From contig MTSL01000134.1 in NCBI GenBank assembly GCA_002794465.1, forward strand, positions 75,495 through 107,494: DNA of 32,000 bases. Direction: 5' to 3'. Below, piece by piece: positions 7,529 through 17,259 of the stretch (within the stretch, counting starts at the first letter, position 1; each line of letters starts with the position of its first letter). This DNA is from Paramicrosporidium saccamoebae KSL3 (taxonomy: Eukaryota > Fungi > Cryptomycota). The notes under the pieces are model-generated. The model ran no database searches. It had not been told where the DNA came from and worked only from the letters and a program-made list of their open reading frames with translations. The position numbers and the translations under genes are program-made.

Positions 7529-8809
7529 ATGCCCGCGGAGATGAAGGACACTGTGGAGTATCTGCAGTCATTGGCTGCGGTACGTGAGCGTTGCGAGGCA
7601 GTGTTGGAGCTGGGCTTGGCAGACAAGTTGGAATGTTTTAGTGTCAGGTTGGATAAATTGCCAGAGGCTGCGGAGATGATTACAAAGTTGATTATTAGGG
7701 ATTATGGTAATGTCGGGCCTGCAGAGGTTGATTCGACGATTGCAAACATTCCACCGCATGGAAGGTGGCGTCATTTTGGAGCTGAGAATGTAGAACGGTT
7801 GATTAAGGAGCTTGAAGTGGCGCTCAACGGAGATAAGATAAAGATTACAACATCGATGCTTGATCTGTTCATTGTGGCAGTATTATTGGATGCAGGCGCT
7901 GGCGATGCCTGGAAGTACAACGATAATGGAAAGACGATTGTTCGCTCAGAGGGACTGGCAGTGGCGGCTCTCCGTATGTTTCAGTCTGGATTATTCTCTT
8001 CGTCAGAAAAGCTGCGTGTTGACTCGAGGGGATTGAAGAATTTAAAAGAATCAGATCTCGTAGCTGGATTCCAGGTGAGCCAAGATAATCCTCTGCTTGG
8101 TGTTGGTGGAAGACTTGCTCTCTTACACCAACTGGGAAACGTCATTGAGAAACAGACGCAATACTTTCCCAAGGACTCTGAGGGATTTTCTCGCCCGGGT
8201 GCATTGGTAGAGTATTTGACCACAAAGCAATCTGCAAAATCCCAAGTCCATATTGACGTCTTTTGGGATCTGGTTATTAATGGTTTTGGAGGAGTTTGGC
8301 CTGAATCGCGGACAAAGCTGAACGGCGTCTCTTTGGGCGATGTCTGGCCTTGTGCAGTACTCGGGTGTCTGATTCCATTCCACAAACTGTCTCAGTGGCT
8401 TTCATACTCTCTAATGGAGCCAATCTCGTACTTTCTCGGGATCGAATTTGTCAATGCCGAAAAGATGACCGGTCTTGCAGAGTATCGAAATGGTGGCCTA
8501 TTCGTCGATTTGAGTATAATTACCCTTAAGGAATCAGCCAAAAAGTATGGAATACAATCTGCAGACTTTTCCGTTCCGACATTTGCTCCTGACAGTCCGG
8601 TGATTGTCGAATGGAGAGCCCTCACTGTTGCACTTATTGATCGATTAGCCATTCTGATGCGCAGTCAATTAAAGGTCAATGCAGAATGCCTGCCGCTCCC
8701 AAAGCTCCTGGAGGCGGGGACATGGAAGGCGGGTCGTGAGATTGCCAAGCAGCTGCGCCCGGGAGGTGGGCCGCCAATCGCGCTCCTTTCGGATGGCACC
8801 TTATTTTAA
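7529..8809 (+). CDS. URC4: DUF1688 protein (Urc4/Urg3-like, uracil catabolism associated), copy A
   Basis: LLDAGAG, RSEGLAVA, GDVW, FHKLSQWLSYSL, TGLAEYRNGGLF, EWRALTV, LEAGTWKAGRE. Confidence 0.88.
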   Translation: MPAEMKDTVEYLQSLAAVRERCEAVLELGLADKLECFSVRLDKLPEAAEMITKLIIRDYGNVGPAEVDSTIANIPPHGRWRHFGAENVERLIKELEVALNGDKIKITTSMLDLFIVAVLLDAGAGDAWKYNDNGKTIVRSEGLAVAALRMFQSGLFSSSEKLRVDSRGLKNLKESDLVAGFQVSQDNPLLGVGGRLALLHQLGNVIEKQTQYFPKDSEGFSRPGALVEYLTTKQSAKSQVHIDVFWDLVINGFGGVWPESRTKLNGVSLGDVWPCAVLGCLIPFHKLSQWLSYSLMEPISYFLGIEFVNAEKMTGLAEYRNGGLFVDLSIITLKESAKKYGIQSADFSVPTFAPDSPVIVEWRALTVALIDRLAILMRSQLKVNAECLPLPKLLEAGTWKAGREIAKQLRPGGGPPIALLSDGTLF

Positions 8810-8853
8810 TGAATAAATCGTATCTTTGGGTAATATTGCGTCGGACTTTTGCA

Positions 8854-10392
8854 ATGCCATCTGTTCCATGTGGCGACTCGGTCCCATATTTGCAGAGCCT
8901 TCCAGCTATACGTGAGCGCTGTGAGTCAGTTTTTGAGTTGGGAATGGCAGGGAAGCTTGAGCATTTTGAGCTCAATTTGAGCCGGCTCAGTGAAGCAGCA
9001 GACATGATTGACAAGCTGATTATACGGGATTTCGGGAAAATTGACAGCGAGCATGTCGAACAGACTCTACAGAAAATCCCGTTTGGCAGATGGCGGCATT
9101 TTGGCACCGAGAACCAGAAGAGTCTATTGTCAGAACTGGGTGCACTGGACAAGATGGAGTTGACGCGCTCAGTGCTGGATCTGATTGTAGTCTCTGTGTT
9201 GTTGGATGCCGGTGCAGGGGATGACTGGAAGTTTAATGACAATGGCAAGATTTTGATGCGATCCGAAGGATTGGCAGTGGCGACCCTGCGCATGTTCCAG
9301 GGGGGTATGTGGTCTTCAGTGGGAAAATTGCAGGTGGATTCGATTGGTCTAAGGGCAATACAGGAATCAGATCTTATCCACTGGTTCCAAGTTCGAAAGG
9401 ACAATCCTCTGCTGGGAGTAAAAGGACGGCTGGACCTCTTGCACAGATTGGGGAGAGTACTTGAGAGTCAGCCCGTTTATTTCCCCAAGGATGTTAACGG
9501 ATTTGCTCGTCCTGGGTCGTTGGTGGACCACCTACTAACAAGACAATGTGGACACGCGCAGATCCATGTCAATGTTCTTTGGGATGTGGTGATGAAGGGA
9601 TTTGGAGGGGTTTGGCCCGAGTCGCGAACCAAACTAGACGGAGTGTCTTTGGGAGACGTTTGGCCCTGCGCCGCTCTTGGCTTATTGGTCCCATTCCATA
9701 AGCTGTCGCAATGGCTTACATACTCCCTAATGGAGCGCATCACACATTTCCTCGACATTAACTTTCTGGAGGCTGATAAGATGACAGGATTGGCAGAGTA
9801 TAGGAACGGCGGATTGTTTATAGATCTTGGAATTCTGACGCCAAAAAAGTTGTCCAGTTTGGAACCATCGCTCCCATCCGTGTTCAATCAGTTGGTCCAG
9901 TTAATGTCAAACACGACGGCTCAACTAAAGTCTGTCAACCCTGCACTCTCTGAGGGGACAATGGAGGGGATGATGGAAGAGCTCGAAAAGTCCCCATTTC
10001 ACAAAGACCTTTTGGATGCACTGAAAGCAAAATCATTAGAGCAAAGGGCGGACGAGACACCCGGTGCAGCAACCGACGAGTGGATCGAGTATGGAAAGGA
10101 TGATTTATGCCCCGATTCTGGAGTCTTGAGCCAAAAAGAGTCTTTGATTTTGGGGTCGTCATTTCCTCCAGAAAGCCAAGTGATTATTGAATGGCGCGCC
10201 CTCACAGTTGCTCTCATGGATCGTCTAATTGCTCTGATGCGCGGACGTCTAAAAGTATCGCCTGAAAGTTTTTCATTTCCAAAGTTTTTTGTGGCTGGAT
10301 CTTGGAAGGCTGGACGTGAGCTTGCCAAGCAGCTCCGTCCGGCCACGGGTGGCCCCCCAATTTCTATAGACTCTGATGGGACGCTTTTTTAA
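8854..10392 (+). CDS. URC4: DUF1688 protein, tandem copy B with an internal insertion of about 88 aa
   Basis: Same motifs as copy A and colinear with it. The start is placed at ATG 8854 (MPSVPCGDSVPYLQSL) by alignment to copy A (MPAEMKDTVEYLQSL). Confidence 0.85.
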   Translation: MPSVPCGDSVPYLQSLPAIRERCESVFELGMAGKLEHFELNLSRLSEAADMIDKLIIRDFGKIDSEHVEQTLQKIPFGRWRHFGTENQKSLLSELGALDKMELTRSVLDLIVVSVLLDAGAGDDWKFNDNGKILMRSEGLAVATLRMFQGGMWSSVGKLQVDSIGLRAIQESDLIHWFQVRKDNPLLGVKGRLDLLHRLGRVLESQPVYFPKDVNGFARPGSLVDHLLTRQCGHAQIHVNVLWDVVMKGFGGVWPESRTKLDGVSLGDVWPCAALGLLVPFHKLSQWLTYSLMERITHFLDINFLEADKMTGLAEYRNGGLFIDLGILTPKKLSSLEPSLPSVFNQLVQLMSNTTAQLKSVNPALSEGTMEGMMEELEKSPFHKDLLDALKAKSLEQRADETPGAATDEWIEYGKDDLCPDSGVLSQKESLILGSSFPPESQVIIEWRALTVALMDRLIALMRGRLKVSPESFSFPKFFVAGSWKAGRELAKQLRPATGGPPISIDSDGTLF

Positions 10393-14958: not shown

Positions 14959-15351
14959 TCAGATTAGGATCACTGAGCACACGGGATAGTGTGAGGGCCG
15001 ATATAGATTTGTACAACGAGTTATAGTTGCGAGATGGTATGTCTACGGACCAGGACTCCGATAAAAGGTCTTATTACTGTCGCGTAGCGGGGATAAATAG
15101 TATTGACTGTCAGGCAAGAAAGGGGGGTTTGTTTACTGCTACTCTTAGAATAGTGTGGATACACATCTCACTGTTCTCAAATACCCAGCAACTAGGTCTT
15201 CTCCAAACTAGGGAACTATTCTCAAATACCCGACTAATCAGCACTCTACGTCACATTACTAATCTTGCAATAATGTTAGGCATTGTCTATATCAACAACC
15301 GTTGTAGACACATCTTTGCTAAGCATTCAATTTGATGAAACTTTACTTATA

Positions 15352-15454
15352 GATTAGTATCGACGCCTCGATTCAACAAGGCTTTAATGATGGATTAGTA
15401 TCGACGCCTCAATTCGGCGAGGCTTTAATGATGGATTAGTATCGACGTCTGGCA
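15352..15454. repeat. 41-bp tandem repeat (2 full units plus 1 partial) that duplicates the HD1 stop codon region
   Basis: GATTAGTATCGACG starts at 15352, 15393 and 15434. On the minus strand each unit ends AG(A/G) CGT CGA TAC TAA (RRRY*). Confidence 0.9.
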
Positions 15455-15882
15455 TTTATGAACCAGTTGTCTAATTGCTTGAGATCTAGTCCCGTTTTCT
15501 CCATAAGTATCTTCTTCTCGTCTCCCGTCGGAAATGGGTGATCTTTATGCTCCTCTAGCCACATCAGTAAAAGCTTTCGTACATGAGTAGAATGATTTGG
15601 TCGGCGCTTACTAGCTGCTTGTACGTCGGAGTTCATATTGTCAAGCTTCTCAATTCGGGCAACTCTGGCCAAATCAATAAAGTGCTGCATAAGGACAAAC
15701 AACATTTTCTCCATATACTGATCCATAATAGTCCCACAGGTCCCTCGAGAGCTGCCAAAATAATTTTCCAGAATAGCCGGAAGCTCCACGAGTAGCTTAG
15801 ATGATTCCTTGTCTGCAGTATCAAAGGTTCTTGAGAGTAATTCTATAGCCGGAAAGAGCGGATGGGCAGTGATAGCAGTCAT
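15436..15882 (-). CDS. TALE-class homeodomain protein (HD1-like) with MEIS/KNOX (MEINOX)-like N-terminus
   Basis: LLLMWLEEHKDHPFPTGDEKKILMEKTGLDLKQLDNWFINARRRY: W19 to W48 spans 32 residues, i.e. the 3-aa TALE loop is present; I50. The N-terminus has AITAHPLFPAIELL and MDQYMEKMLFVLMQHFIDL. Confidence 0.93.
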   Translation of the reverse strand: MTAITAHPLFPAIELLSRTFDTADKESSKLLVELPAILENYFGSSRGTCGTIMDQYMEKMLFVLMQHFIDLARVARIEKLDNMNSDVQAASKRRPNHSTHVRKLLLMWLEEHKDHPFPTGDEKKILMEKTGLDLKQLDNWFINARRRY

Positions 15883-15924
15883 TCCGCGGCTGGGTGGCTG
15901 AACCTAAGCCAGCATTTCAAGCTT

Positions 15925-16388
15925 TGACAGCTTTTCCTATTATGCACCAATCATCAGATTTGATATCTTGATTGTGATCACTCGAAAATTGAAAAGCGAA
16001 TGTTTAAAAGTAGCTAAAAGTTTTACGGATACTTTCTCTTCTGTGCTACTAAAGCTTCTTGTGAGTAATTATACAGCCGAAAAGAGCGGATGGACAATGA
16101 TGGTGACTTGGCAATTGGGTGGCTGAATTCAAGCCATCCTTGAAAAACTTTGACAGCTTATATTTAGGATCCTCAGCCACCAAATACCAATGGCTCGATC
16201 TTGGTCATTTGGTATTGACTTTATTCAATTGTCGAATCGTGATTAACGGAATGTCGTCTTGTAACAAAAAGTTATGGAATCTGACACAGCTGTGCTAGGT
16301 TAGTATGGAGAGACAATGCTGTACAAAATTGTTTTCATCTTTGTCAGTCACATATCAGCCACCACCTGTCAAACATGTCAAACTGACA
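15925..16388. promoter_or_regulatory. Cluster of TALE-type TGACA(G) sites in the bidirectional HD1/HD2 spacer
   Basis: TGACAG at 15925 and 16151, TGACA at 16282 and 16384, TGTCA at 16342, 16367 and 16376. That is 7 sites in 540 bp, against about 1 expected for a 5-mer on two strands at uniform composition. Confidence 0.65.
16030..16160 (-). pseudogene. Relic copy of the HD1 5' end
   Basis: The minus strand reads HPLFSAV*LLTRSFSSTEEKV against HD1 HPLFPAIELLSRTFDTADKES. GAA has become TAA and the ATG is lost. Confidence 0.85.
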
Positions 16389-16422
16389 ACAAGATCTTGC
16401 GCCCGCCTTATGCAGCCAACAA

Positions 16423-17259
16423 ATGCGCCTCTTTCTTCAGCACACCTCAAGGACCAAGAGTGTAATAGATGAAGCTGTGAGTGCATTTAAACGCCGCAAT
16501 CTGGCTCAAGCGAATCTACTGCTCCAGCAGAATTTGCTTGAAGCTCGTGATATTCATCAGGAGCTTTTATTGGAGGCATCAACTAAGCTGGCAAATGAAC
16601 ATCTTGCCCAGTACGCTCGTTTCGTGCGTACGCTGTCCGACCAGGTGGATCAAAAGGTTTCAGATGTCAATAACACTGGAGCTAGTGTGCAACGTCTGCT
16701 TTTAGTGACCCCGACAGCTCTGATGCAAATGAGCGTCGTAATGTTCCGATTCGCAGTTGCAAACCGCCTTTATCGGTTCCAAGTCAAAATCCTGGAGATG
16801 AGTTTTGTACACAACAGCCTGCAATCAACTGTTCTGACAGCAAAGAGGTTTTCAAATGACATTATCTCTACGTTAACGTCGAGCTACTCTGCTGATTCAT
16901 ATCCTGGCTTGCCTGAAGTGGCCCGCTTGGGACGTGTGACAGGCCTGGGAGAGCGTCAGATCGTAATGTGGTTTACTAATCGTCGCTCTCGCACCAATAA
17001 CAAACGCAGCCGGTCGGGGAAATCCTGCGACCATGAGATCCTGAGCGACGCCAACACACTCTCGCCACCCGACAGCCCCAGTTCAATGATCAGTTTTCCT
17101 CCTCAGCATCGACAATCCCAACTTTCTTCTGATGACAACTTTTTCCAGGAAAGTAGCCGGCAAGCAGAGTTGGAGTTTTACAAGACCATGGTCTGCAATA
17201 ACACCCGCCATCATTGGGATGACTATGCAGAGTTCTTTGCTGATATTGGTAGACATTAA
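16423..17259 (+). CDS. Typical (non-TALE) homeodomain protein (HD2-like)
   Basis: KRFSNDIISTLTSSYSADSYPGLPEVARLGRVTGLGERQIVMWFTNRRSR: F8, L16, Y25-P26, L40, W48-F49-N51-R53 at 60-aa spacing with no TALE loop. Helical N-terminus of about 135 aa and a Ser/Pro plus acidic C-tail. Confidence 0.88.
   Translation: MRLFLQHTSRTKSVIDEAVSAFKRRNLAQANLLLQQNLLEARDIHQELLLEASTKLANEHLAQYARFVRTLSDQVDQKVSDVNNTGASVQRLLLVTPTALMQMSVVMFRFAVANRLYRFQVKILEMSFVHNSLQSTVLTAKRFSNDIISTLTSSYSADSYPGLPEVARLGRVTGLGERQIVMWFTNRRSRTNNKRSRSGKSCDHEILSDANTLSPPDSPSSMISFPPQHRQSQLSSDDNFFQESSRQAELEFYKTMVCNNTRHHWDDYAEFFADIGRH

What the first reader, a model, noticed from the sequence alone, without database searches (positions are those of the whole stretch)
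15670..15876. The TALE protein keeps a MEINOX (MEIS/KNOX) dimerisation domain
Seen: AITAHPLFPAIELL and MDQYMEKMLFVLMQHFIDL, and the protein stops right after helix 3. Known: animal MEIS has IYGHPLFPLLAL...LDNLMIQAIQVLRFHLLEL and plant KNOX has IMAHP...LDQFMEAYCEML. Yeast alpha2 and basidiomycete HD1 proteins lack a recognisable MEINOX. Inference: a minimal MEINOX+HD protein in a MAT-like position would link fungal HD mating factors to the ancient TALE heterodimer zygote switch (Chlamydomonas GSM1/GSP1).
Basis: partly seen in the sequence, partly recalled or inferred. Interest (0 to 1): 0.75.

Follow-up and report, generated by a model that had tools for sequence, protein, structure and literature searches.

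The report
MEIS-like domain in rozellid fungal homeobox protein
A 148-residue homeobox protein of the early-branching fungal parasite Paramicrosporidium saccamoebae, encoded back-to-back with a second homeobox gene as in mushroom mating loci, has a weak but statistically real copy of the MEIS/KNOX partner-binding domain, which a 2018 survey did not find in fungi.

Summary
Window 15670-15876 (- strand) encodes AITAHPLFPAIELL...MDQYMEKMLFVLMQHFIDL. It lies in an intronless 148-aa ORF (15436-15882) that ends at homeodomain position 56.

The window is Paramicrosporidium saccamoebae (Rozellomycota). The gene and its divergent non-TALE neighbour (16423-17259) were published in 2017 as "HD1/HD2 homologs". 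No MEINOX domain was reported for them.

Evidence on the MEINOX claim:
- Pfam Meis_PKNOX_N hits only below its threshold (16.2 bits, E 0.015; the ortholog scores 20.1 bits, E 9e-4; cutoff 27).
- KNOX1 and KNOX2 do not hit.
- A profile-profile comparison against 104 real MEIS/PKNOX domains gives 94.8% probability and E 5e-8. It covers MEIS-A and MEIS-B in register, and 0 of 300 column shuffles reach the score.
- The B half alone is also significant (P 6e-4; 0 of 300 shuffles).
- No MEINOX structure has been solved, so the fold could not be compared.

The ~150-aa MEINOX-like+HD protein, paired with the second homeobox gene (HD2), recurs with conserved synteny in metagenomic relatives. A similar pair occurs in the chytrid Batrachochytrium salamandrivorans.

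Verdict: a divergent, minimal MEIS-class TALE protein in early fungi. Dimerisation with HD2 and any mating role are inferred, not shown. The 2017 paper found no allelic divergence at the locus.

The parts
15436..15882 (-). Intronless CDS of the 148-aa TALE homeobox protein (published as one of PSACC_01945/01946), stop codon included
   Evidence: ORF list. Identical 148-aa gene call on NCBI contig MTSL01000134.1. Pfam Homeobox_KN E 1.6e-18.
15817..15876 (-). MEIS-A-like block, aa 3-22 (AITAHPLFPAIELLSRTFDT); predicted helix 10-22
   Evidence: Pfam Meis_PKNOX_N aa 3-23 against profile positions 8-28, E 0.015. hhalign of the A part alone gives E 8.3e-8. AF2 predicts a helix.
15730..15816 (-). Variable middle segment, aa 23-51 (predicted helix 26-45 plus loop); carries an indel relative to L002
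   Evidence: Alignments. AF2 model.
15652..15729 (-). MEIS-B-like block, aa 52-77 (IMDQYMEKMLFVLMQHFIDLARVARI); part of the long predicted helix 51-83
   Evidence: hhalign of aa 41-86 alone maps to the MEIS-B columns: score 22.5, P 5.9e-4, 0 of 300 shuffles reach it.
15439..15615 (-). TALE homeodomain, aa 90-148 (HPFP loop extension; helix 3 NWFINARRRY); the protein ends here
   Evidence: Pfam. PDB sequence hits PKNOX1 2.5e-12, TGIF2LX, MEIS1/2. Foldseek hits to the same homeodomains.
16423..17259 (+). Divergently transcribed non-TALE homeobox gene (HD2 type, 278 aa). Pfam aligns aa 142-190 to the homeodomain, which begins a few residues upstream. The preceding ~135 aa have no Pfam match. The C-terminal motif DNFF..EFY.TM...FADI is conserved. 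This is the candidate partner.
   Evidence: Pfam Homeodomain E 1.3e-10. Orthologs aligned. Synteny.
15883..16422 (.). Shared 540-bp intergenic region, presumably a bidirectional promoter, with 7 TGACA cores where 1.5 are expected
16357..16408 (.). 52-nt block almost identical in L002 that holds tandem TTTGACA motifs; a candidate TALE binding and autoregulatory element
   Evidence: Alignment of the two intergenic regions. Motif positions.
16028..16159 (-). Decayed tandem copy of the TALE promoter-proximal region plus the first ~27 codons (no ATG, in-frame stop)
   Evidence: the repeat finder families D2-D4. Alignment. Absent from L002.
15341..15463 (.). Three 41-nt tandem repeats; the third copy contains the last codons and the stop of the TALE gene
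   Evidence: the repeat finder family D1.

Best explanation
The ORF at 15436-15882 (-) encodes a minimal MEIS-class TALE homeodomain transcription factor of Paramicrosporidium saccamoebae. It has an ~85-aa N-terminal helical module that is a divergent homolog of the bipartite MEINOX (MEIS-A/MEIS-B) domain. A short disordered linker follows, then a TALE homeodomain at which the protein ends.

Shown:
- The sequence, the domain order and the TALE homeodomain.
- Statistically supported colinear similarity of both N-terminal blocks to MEIS/PKNOX.
- Conservation of the ~150-aa architecture, and of the head-to-head pairing with a non-TALE homeobox gene (HD2), in several related lineages.

Inferred:
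- By analogy with MEIS-PBX, KNOX-BELL and basidiomycete HD1-HD2, the N-terminal module is the protein-protein interface. It would tie the TALE protein to a second homeodomain protein, most likely the adjacent co-regulated HD2 through that protein's N-terminal region, which has no Pfam match.
- The heterodimer would bind composite sites with a TGACA core. These would include the conserved TGACA cluster in the genes' own shared promoter, which would make the pair autoregulatory.
- HD2, with its conserved C-terminal motif, would supply functions that the 148-aa protein has no room for.
- Whether the pair acts as a self/non-self mating switch or as an allele-invariant developmental or zygotic regulator is open. 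The published absence of allelic divergence favours the second.
For: Identity and locus.

MEINOX similarity:
- Pfam Meis_PKNOX_N is the only non-homeodomain hit (apart from a 13-bit Phospho_p8 match inside the homeodomain) and falls at the right place: E 0.015 for the full protein, 0.0045 for aa 1-81.
- The L002 ortholog scores E 9e-4 with two matched stretches.
- hhalign of window+L002 against 104 MEIS/PKNOX domains: probability 94.8%, E 5.2e-8, 76 columns spanning A and B in register.
- The window protein alone gives 82% and E 1.1e-5. The 7-member family gives 81% and E 1.2e-5. Nine sequences including chytrids give 74% over 73 columns.
- Controls: 0 of 300 column shuffles reach the score for the whole region or for the B half, and the reversed alignment scores 11.6.
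- Reciprocal test: HMMs built only from the fungal sequences score real MEIS/PKNOX proteins at a median of 8.7-10.9 bits. Between 43% and 61% of them exceed the best of 2,360 shuffled decoys.

Homeodomain class: best PDB hits are PKNOX1, TGIF and MEIS, all ahead of PBX.

Fold: AF2 with a 6-sequence alignment predicts three N-terminal helices at pLDDT ~66-84.

Conservation:
- Full-length ~150-aa relatives P0080, P0087, P0100, P0103 and the L007 protein.
- Same order TFIIS_Zn - HD2 <-> TALE - Rsm22 in L003, and TFIIS_Zn - HD2 <-> TALE in L007.
- Same divergent pair in L002.
- A chytrid pair in L006.

Promoter motifs.
Against: - The curated Pfam threshold for Meis_PKNOX_N is not reached, and KNOX1/KNOX2 do not hit.
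- None of the more divergent family members or chytrid proteins hits Meis_PKNOX_N on its own. Most of the profile-profile signal comes from the P. saccamoebae clade and from the short HPLFP helix.
- The small-family and chytrid sub-alignments alone reach only 14-17% probability.
- A profile of the fungal N-termini retrieved no MEIS or KNOX protein at E <= 10 from the 5.8-billion-protein database.
- No experimental MEINOX structure exists, so there is no structural confirmation.
- The adjacent partner is non-TALE, whereas known MEINOX partners (PBC, BELL) are TALE proteins.
- The HD2 N-terminus shows no Pfam similarity to PBC or any other family.
- No interaction, expression or allelic data were available here.
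Confidence: 0.75

Rival explanations
1. The N-terminal resemblance is convergence or chance. Under this reading a short HPLFP-type helix cap and an amphipathic helix merely mimic MEIS-A/B, and the domain is a lineage-specific helical interaction module unrelated to MEINOX, like the idiosyncratic N-termini of basidiomycete HD1 proteins.
For: Pfam stays below threshold and aligns only 21 residues. Family members P0080, P0087, P0100 and P0103 and the chytrid proteins give no Pfam hit. Their sub-profiles match MEIS only over the 15-16 columns around HPL[FY]. The KNOX comparison is not significant. The large-database profile search did not reach MEIS or KNOX.
Against: Two separate blocks match independently, in the right order, and at the right place relative to a MEIS-like TALE homeodomain: A at E 8e-8 and B at P 6e-4, with 0 of 300 shuffles each. 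The ortholog scores higher in Pfam, with two stretches. The reciprocal HMMs separate real MEIS/PKNOX proteins from 2,360 decoys. Conservation is concentrated in exactly these two blocks.
Confidence: 0.15
2. The domain is a genuine MEINOX homolog, but its partner is not the neighbouring HD2. It would then homodimerise, or bind a PBC/BELL-like TALE protein encoded elsewhere, and the head-to-head HD2 gene would be only co-regulated.
For: All characterised MEINOX partners are TALE proteins (Joo et al. 2018, PMC6219170). The HD2 N-terminus has no detectable PBC similarity. Joo et al. propose a homodimerising proto-TALE protein.
Against: The pair is kept adjacent and divergent in four rozellid-type contigs at 32-73% TALE identity (the window, L002, L003, L007) and apparently in a chytrid. 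Adjacency is also the hallmark of interacting HD1/HD2 pairs in Basidiomycota. The rest of the genome could not be searched here.
Confidence: 0.2
3. The pair is not a mating-type determinant at all. It would be an allele-invariant developmental or life-cycle regulator, for example of spore or zygote programmes, in a diploid or homothallic parasite.
For: Quandt et al. 2017 found no heterozygosity or allelic divergence at these genes in a genome they infer to be diploid. The homeobox genes diverge only modestly faster than their neighbours: TALE 32% and HD2 37%, against 42-65% for flanking genes.
Against: One isolate cannot exclude multiallelism in populations. The arrangement is that of basidiomycete HD MAT loci. 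The N-terminal half of HD2 and the TALE linker are the least conserved parts.
Confidence: 0.5

Closest known systems
Animal MEIS/PKNOX (PREP)/Homothorax TALE proteins (Pfam Meis_PKNOX_N + Homeobox_KN)
   Same: Both have an N-terminal bipartite domain: (A/G)HPLFP..L helix, a variable spacer, then (L/M)D.(L/Y)M......L..H(L/F)..L helix. It lies upstream of a TALE homeodomain whose helix 3 reads NWFINARRR. Profile-profile probability is 94.8%. The best PDB homeodomain hits are PKNOX1 and MEIS.
   Different: The protein is only 148 aa, against ~400-470. The MEIS-A to MEIS-B spacer and the linker to the homeodomain are much shorter. It lacks the C-terminal part of MEIS-B (..CDNFCHRYISCLKGKM) and has no C-terminal region. 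It falls below the Pfam gathering score. Its neighbour and presumed partner is a non-TALE homeodomain protein rather than PBX.
Plant and algal KNOX proteins (KNOX1/KNOX2; Chlamydomonas GSM1)
   Same: Same overall MEINOX+HD logic. The motif MDQYMEKMLFVL resembles LDQFMEAYCEML. The homeodomain has I50 (WFIN).
   Different: There is no Pfam KNOX1, KNOX2 or ELK hit. hhalign against the small KNOX alignment is not significant (P 0.006-0.025 over 11-12 columns), although that alignment also missed MEIS. The partner class is different.
Basidiomycete HD1/HD2 mating-type genes (bE/bW, A-locus Y/Z, Sxi1/Sxi2) and the HD1-like/HD2 MAT-like locus of Rhizophagus (comparison from general knowledge)
   Same: A divergently transcribed TALE (HD1-type) and non-TALE (HD2-type) pair, with N-termini as the presumed dimerisation surface. 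Quandt et al. 2017 already noted this similarity for this very locus.
   Different: According to Joo et al. 2018, MEIS/KNOX homology was not found in fungal TALE proteins. No allelic divergence was seen at this locus. The proteins are much smaller. Orthology to basidiomycete HD1 was not tested here.
TGIF-class TALE proteins
   Same: The homeodomain is about as similar as to MEIS: TGIF2LX 46.5 bits and TGIF1 38.6 bits.
   Different: From general knowledge, TGIF proteins have no MEINOX-type N-terminal domain. This was not tested here.

Membership tests
MEINOX-class TALE homeodomain proteins (MEIS/PKNOX/KNOX) | TALE homeodomain (three extra residues between helices 1 and 2) | tested here: met
   Pfam Homeobox_KN E 1.6e-18 over aa 108-147. 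HPFP loop. PDB TALE homeodomains are the top hits.
MEINOX-class TALE homeodomain proteins (MEIS/PKNOX/KNOX) | Helix 3 of the WFIN(A/Q)R(R/K)R type (Ile50), as in MEIS/KNOX/TGIF and unlike PBC (Gly50) or IRO (Ala50) | tested here: met
   The sequence reads NWFINARRRY. The class residues are cited from general knowledge.
MEINOX-class TALE homeodomain proteins (MEIS/PKNOX/KNOX) | N-terminal domain passes the curated Pfam model Meis_PKNOX_N (PF16493, gathering score 27 bits) | tested here: not met
   16.2 bits and E 0.015, aligning only aa 3-23. The L002 ortholog reaches 20.1 bits and E 9e-4. Other family members give no hit.
MEINOX-class TALE homeodomain proteins (MEIS/PKNOX/KNOX) | Bipartite A and B helices, colinear with MEIS-A/MEIS-B, upstream of the homeodomain (remote-homology level) | tested here: met
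   hhalign probability 94.8%, E 5.2e-8, 76 columns. A alone gives E 8e-8 and B alone P 5.9e-4. 0 of 300 shuffles reach either the whole-region or the B-half score. Reciprocal HMM test.
MEINOX-class TALE homeodomain proteins (MEIS/PKNOX/KNOX) | KNOX1, KNOX2 and ELK domains (plant KNOX subclass) | tested here: not met
   No Pfam hit at E <= 10. hhalign against three KNOX sequences is not significant. That reference alignment was too shallow for a fair test, because the MEIS-vs-KNOX control also failed.
MEINOX-class TALE homeodomain proteins (MEIS/PKNOX/KNOX) | Same three-dimensional fold as a MEIS/KNOX N-domain | not testable with these tools
   No PDB chain matches a MEIS N-domain. Foldseek matches only the homeodomain. 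AF2 predicts three helices at pLDDT 66-84.
MEINOX-class TALE homeodomain proteins (MEIS/PKNOX/KNOX) | The N-domain mediates heterodimerisation with a partner homeodomain protein | not testable with these tools
   Inferred only from adjacency and conservation of HD2.
Fungal HD1/HD2 mating-type (MAT) locus | Adjacent, divergently transcribed TALE (HD1-type) and non-TALE (HD2-type) genes | tested here: met
   15436-15882 (-) and 16423-17259 (+). The same pair occurs in L002, L003 and L007.
Fungal HD1/HD2 mating-type (MAT) locus | Multiple highly divergent alleles; heterozygous in diploids or dikaryons | not tested
   Only one haplotype is in the window. Quandt et al. 2017 report no heterozygosity or allelic divergence, which argues against this feature.
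Fungal HD1/HD2 mating-type (MAT) locus | Orthology of the TALE gene to basidiomycete HD1 | not tested

The most novel reading that the evidence does not exclude
The head-to-head pair of a MEINOX-bearing TALE gene and a non-TALE HD2 gene, seen here in Rozellomycota and apparently in a chytrid, is the ancestral fungal form of the homeodomain zygote/mating switch. Basidiomycete HD1 proteins would then be MEIS/KNOX-class TALE proteins whose MEINOX domain diverged beyond recognition. The MEINOX surface would have been re-targeted from a TALE partner (PBC/BELL) to a non-TALE partner at the base of Fungi.
Probability: 0.3. Interest if true: 0.8.

Novelty: new variant of a known kind. Interest (0 to 1): 0.6.

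Why it matters
Heterodimers of homeodomain proteins switch on the diploid programme after gamete fusion in green algae, land plants, brown algae and fungi. Plants and algae use MEINOX-TALE plus TALE pairs. Fungi use TALE plus non-TALE pairs whose dimerisation regions have no recognised relatives. The most systematic survey (Joo et al. 2018) found MEIS/KNOX homology in apusozoans, ichthyosporeans and choanoflagellates "but not from Fungi".

A MEIS-like N-domain on the TALE member of an HD1/HD2-type pair in early-branching fungi would be a sequence-level bridge between the two systems. It also gives a very small, tractable protein (~150 aa, essentially MEINOX+HD) for asking how the MEINOX surface chooses partners. 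In addition, it corrects the published impression that this gene arrangement is not conserved among relatives of Paramicrosporidium.

Tried and rejected
- Single-sequence Pfam scans of the divergent relatives (P0080, P0087, P0100, P0103, P0078, P0072, P0094) gave no Meis_PKNOX_N, KNOX or PBC hit.
- A profile of nine fungal N-termini searched against the 5.8-billion-protein set returned only its own members. The family could not be enlarged that way, and no MEIS or KNOX protein was reached.
- The KNOX comparison is uninformative. Only three KNOX sequences were obtained, and the MEIS-vs-KNOX positive control itself failed (probability 8.8%, wrong register).
- AF2 without an alignment gave pLDDT ~50 for the N-domain.
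- Foldseek against the PDB matched only the homeodomain, and the PDB holds no MEIS N-domain.
- TGACAG counts over the whole window are not enriched (23 found, 20 expected). Only the local intergenic cluster and its conservation are notable.
- The bacterial-type promoter/terminator scan is irrelevant for a eukaryotic locus.
- I considered that the 148-aa ORF might be a truncated gene model, with a downstream intron or an upstream exon formed by the 16028-16159 copy. I rejected this. The stop is conserved in L002, the relatives are 148-166 aa, and the upstream copy lacks an ATG and has an in-frame stop.
- The HD2 N-terminus (aa 1-134) has no Pfam match.

Full report
**Origin of the window.** The exact 148-aa product of the ORF is recorded on NCBI contig MTSL01000134.1 of assembly GCA_002794465.1. 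Accession MTSL00000000 is the genome of Paramicrosporidium saccamoebae, an intranuclear parasite of amoebae in the Rozellomycota (Quandt et al. 2017, PMC5701793). [quoted passage not shown] It does not mention a MEINOX or MEIS-like domain. In the searchable library it is the only paper that contains both "Paramicrosporidium" and "homeodomain".

**Observation.** Window 15670-15876 (- strand) translates to AITAHPLFPAIELL...MDQYMEKMLFVLMQHFIDL. This is aa 3-71 of an uninterrupted 148-aa ORF at 15436-15882. The C-terminal 59 residues are a TALE homeodomain (Pfam Homeobox_KN, E 1.6e-18; HPFP loop; helix 3 NWFINARRRY), and the stop codon follows directly. The stop is at the same position in the closest relative, metagenome contig L002 (73% identity). 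More distant full-length relatives are 148-166 aa. The "minimal" architecture is therefore real and not a truncated gene model. A 278-aa non-TALE homeodomain protein is encoded 540 bp upstream on the other strand, at 16423-17259 (Pfam Homeodomain, E 1.3e-10).

**Is the N-terminus a MEINOX domain?**

*Sequence against curated profiles.* Meis_PKNOX_N is the only Pfam family matched outside the homeodomain. It matches at the expected place (aa 3-23 against profile positions 8-28), but at 16.2 bits and E 0.015, below the 27-bit gathering score. For aa 1-81 alone the E-value is 0.0045. The conceptual L002 ortholog does better: 20.1 bits, E 9e-4, two matched stretches. KNOX1, KNOX2, ELK and PBC do not hit.

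*Profile against profile.* I retrieved 118 genuine MEIS/PKNOX N-domain proteins and 2 KNOX proteins from the protein database, using bait sequences only to fetch real entries. I aligned 104 of the MEIS/PKNOX domains.

| Query N-terminal alignment | hhalign probability | E-value | Extent |
|---|---|---|---|
| Window + L002 | 94.8% | 5.2e-8 | 76 columns, AIxxHPLFP through ...LMQHFIDLARVARI, in register with MEIS-A and MEIS-B |
| Window protein alone | 82% | 1.1e-5 | 70 columns |
| Seven-member family | 81% | 1.2e-5 | 17 columns (84 columns with relaxed alignment settings) |
| Nine sequences including chytrids | 74% | 2.7e-5 | 73 columns |

*Controls.*
- 300 column shuffles of the query gave scores of 12.4 ± 2.6 (max 25.0), against 45.7 observed.
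- The reversed alignment scored 11.6.
- The A half alone gave E 8e-8.
- The B half alone (aa 41-86, without HPLFP) still mapped to the MEIS-B columns, with score 22.5 and P 5.9e-4. It exceeded all 300 shuffles (max 20.0).

*Reciprocal test.* HMMs built only from the fungal N-termini scored real MEIS/PKNOX proteins at a median of 8.7-10.9 bits. Between 43% and 61% of them scored above the best of 2,360 composition-matched decoys.

*Conservation pattern.* Between the window and L002 the two blocks are the best conserved parts of the N-terminus. The spacer between them is variable, with an 8-codon indel.

*Homeodomain class.* The best solved relatives are PKNOX1 (2.5e-12), TGIF2LX and MEIS1/2, well ahead of PBX/Exd.

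*Weaknesses.*
- The signal is strongest in the P. saccamoebae clade and weak in its divergent relatives: 14-17% probability for the small-family and chytrid subsets, limited to the HPL[FY] helix. None of them hits Pfam.
- The profile search of 5.8 billion proteins did not reach MEIS or KNOX.
- The KNOX comparison was underpowered. It used three sequences, and the MEIS-KNOX control failed.
- There is no solved MEINOX structure. The AF2 model cannot be compared with a reference, and Foldseek matched only the homeodomain. That model has mean pLDDT 75.5, with helices at 10-22, 26-45 and 51-83 and a disordered linker at 83-94.

My estimate is about 0.8 that the N-terminus is a divergent homolog of the MEIS-type MEINOX domain. 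It is not a Pfam-grade member.

**Context and conservation.** An exhaustive phmmer search found small full-length relatives at 33-38% identity over aa ~1-147: P0080, P0087, P0100 and P0103, all from metagenomes.

- *L003.* P0087 lies on a 21-kb contig with the gene order Vta1 - RNA_pol_Rbc25 - TFIIS-type Zn ribbon - HD2 <-> TALE - Rsm22 - F-box/FBO_C - DSBA. This is the same order as in the window. tblastn confirms the order and gives 42-65% identity for the flanking genes, 37% for HD2 and 32% for the TALE protein.
- *L007.* A further contig shows TFIIS_Zn - HD2 <-> TALE, with a 154-aa TALE protein that begins MSYAIHPLRALIIL and contains DLFEAYLYYILKEI.
- *L002.* This contig has the same divergent pair.

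By synteny and flank identity, the pair is conserved among relatives of Paramicrosporidium.

Chytrid TALE proteins carry an N-terminal HP(L/A)Y..L.LW.LRD helix and a later LDR.I.....LVHQI.D helix that align with the same blocks. They are P0078 from Polyrhizophydium stewartii, P0072, and P0094. P0094 is encoded in the B. salamandrivorans assembly GCA_021556675.1. There it sits head-to-head with a gene whose product has a weak non-TALE homeodomain (Pfam E 0.084 on the first exon; the spliced helix 3 reads IVKWFEMKRM), and Vta1 lies next door. This suggests, but does not prove, that the pairing predates the rozellid/chytrid split.

**Mechanism.** Shown: a TALE homeodomain with the MEIS/KNOX/TGIF-type recognition helix, a helical N-terminal module with MEIS-A/B similarity, and conserved pairing with HD2.

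Inferred: the N-module is the interaction surface for a partner homeodomain protein, most plausibly HD2. HD2's N-terminal ~135 residues have no known domain. Its C-terminus carries a conserved DNFF..EFY.TM...FADI motif, which could supply functions that the 148-aa protein lacks.

The shared intergenic region contains 7 TGACA cores where 1.5 are expected. TGACA is the core of MEIS/TALE binding sites (from general knowledge). Three of the cores lie in a 52-nt block at 16357-16408 that is almost identical in L002, although the two intergenic regions are only 70% identical overall. This fits autoregulation but is only a motif-level hint.

**Literature comparison and novelty.** Joo et al. [quoted passage not shown] Dierschke et al. 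2021 (PMC8476127) contrast TALE-TALE pairs in plants and algae with TALE/non-TALE pairs in fungi. Searches for MEINOX plus fungi or chytrids, for HD1/HD2 plus Chytridiomycota, and for Meis_PKNOX_N found no report of a MEINOX-like domain in a fungal TALE protein.

The locus itself is therefore known. The following appear to be new:
- the MEIS-like N-domain;
- its conservation in a ~150-aa family;
- the conserved synteny in relatives;
- the chytrid counterpart.

I rate it a new variant of a known kind: a minimal MEIS-class TALE protein paired with a non-TALE partner. A mating function remains speculative. The published lack of allelic divergence argues for an allele-invariant regulator, or for a homothallic or otherwise cryptic system.

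Noticed in passing
window 16028-16159 (compared with 15800-15933): A ~130-bp decayed tandem copy, offset ~226 bp and 77-93% identical, of the TALE gene's promoter-proximal region and first ~27 codons. It reads ..TIIVHPLFSAV*LLTRSF, with no ATG and an in-frame stop. It is absent from L002, and it accounts for the longer intergenic region in the window (540 bp against 316 bp).
   Followed up: partly
window 15341-15463: Three tandem 41-nt repeats (68-83% identity to the reference copy). The third copy contains the last codons and the stop codon of the TALE gene, so the 3' UTR repeats the gene's own end twice. L002 has no such repeat downstream of its stop.
   Followed up: no
window 16357-16408; L002 ~647-698: A 52-nt block upstream of the HD2 start codon is almost identical between the window and L002, although the intergenic regions are only 70% identical overall. 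It contains GTTTGACATGTTTGACAGGTGG plus a third TGACA. A further conserved AAGCTGTCAAAG / CAGCCACC element sits ~40-55 nt upstream of the TALE start codon in the window, in the window's duplicate and in L002. These are candidate TALE binding sites.
   Followed up: partly
L002 1021-1090: The 73%-identical metagenomic ortholog has a 1-nt frameshift and an 8-codon deletion in the spacer between the MEIS-A-like and MEIS-B-like blocks. This could be an assembly error, a pseudogene or an unrecognised tiny intron. The gene caller therefore reported only the C-terminal 92 aa (P0002).
   Followed up: partly
L003 (ENA ERZ27237304 k141_71349) and L007 (ENA ERZ1066135 NODE-7415): Uncultured relatives keep the same neighbourhood, Vta1 - Rbc25 - TFIIS_Zn - HD2 <-> TALE - Rsm22 - FBO - DSBA. 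This contrasts with the published statement that the arrangement is not conserved in other Rozellomycota. The authors had compared only Rozella allomycis and Microsporidia.
   Followed up: yes
L006 5288-9343 (Batrachochytrium salamandrivorans GCA_021556675.1, JAKFGI010000015.1): The chytrid TALE gene (P0094) has an N-terminal AHPLYPLILEIWQLRDE and a later LDRWIVSMVVTLVHQIID. It is head-to-head with a 469-aa gene whose homeodomain-like region is split by an intron inside the Trp48 codon (TG|G), a position Joo et al. 2018 highlight for TALE genes. Helix 3 of that neighbour reads WFEMKRM, which lacks the usual Asn51. Vta1 is the next gene downstream of the TALE gene.
   Followed up: partly
window 7529-10392: Two adjacent same-strand ORFs (426 and 527 aa; the gene caller gives 426 and 482 aa) both carry Pfam DUF1688. 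This looks like a tandem gene duplication.
   Followed up: no
one search hit list (P0003, P0004, P0010, P0012, P0082 and others): Many of the top phmmer hits to the TALE homeodomain are metagenomic proteins with 4-9 separate homeodomain matches in one polypeptide. They are either multi-homeodomain TALE proteins or collapsed or duplicated assemblies. P0021 and P0081 clearly contain repeated segments.
   Followed up: no
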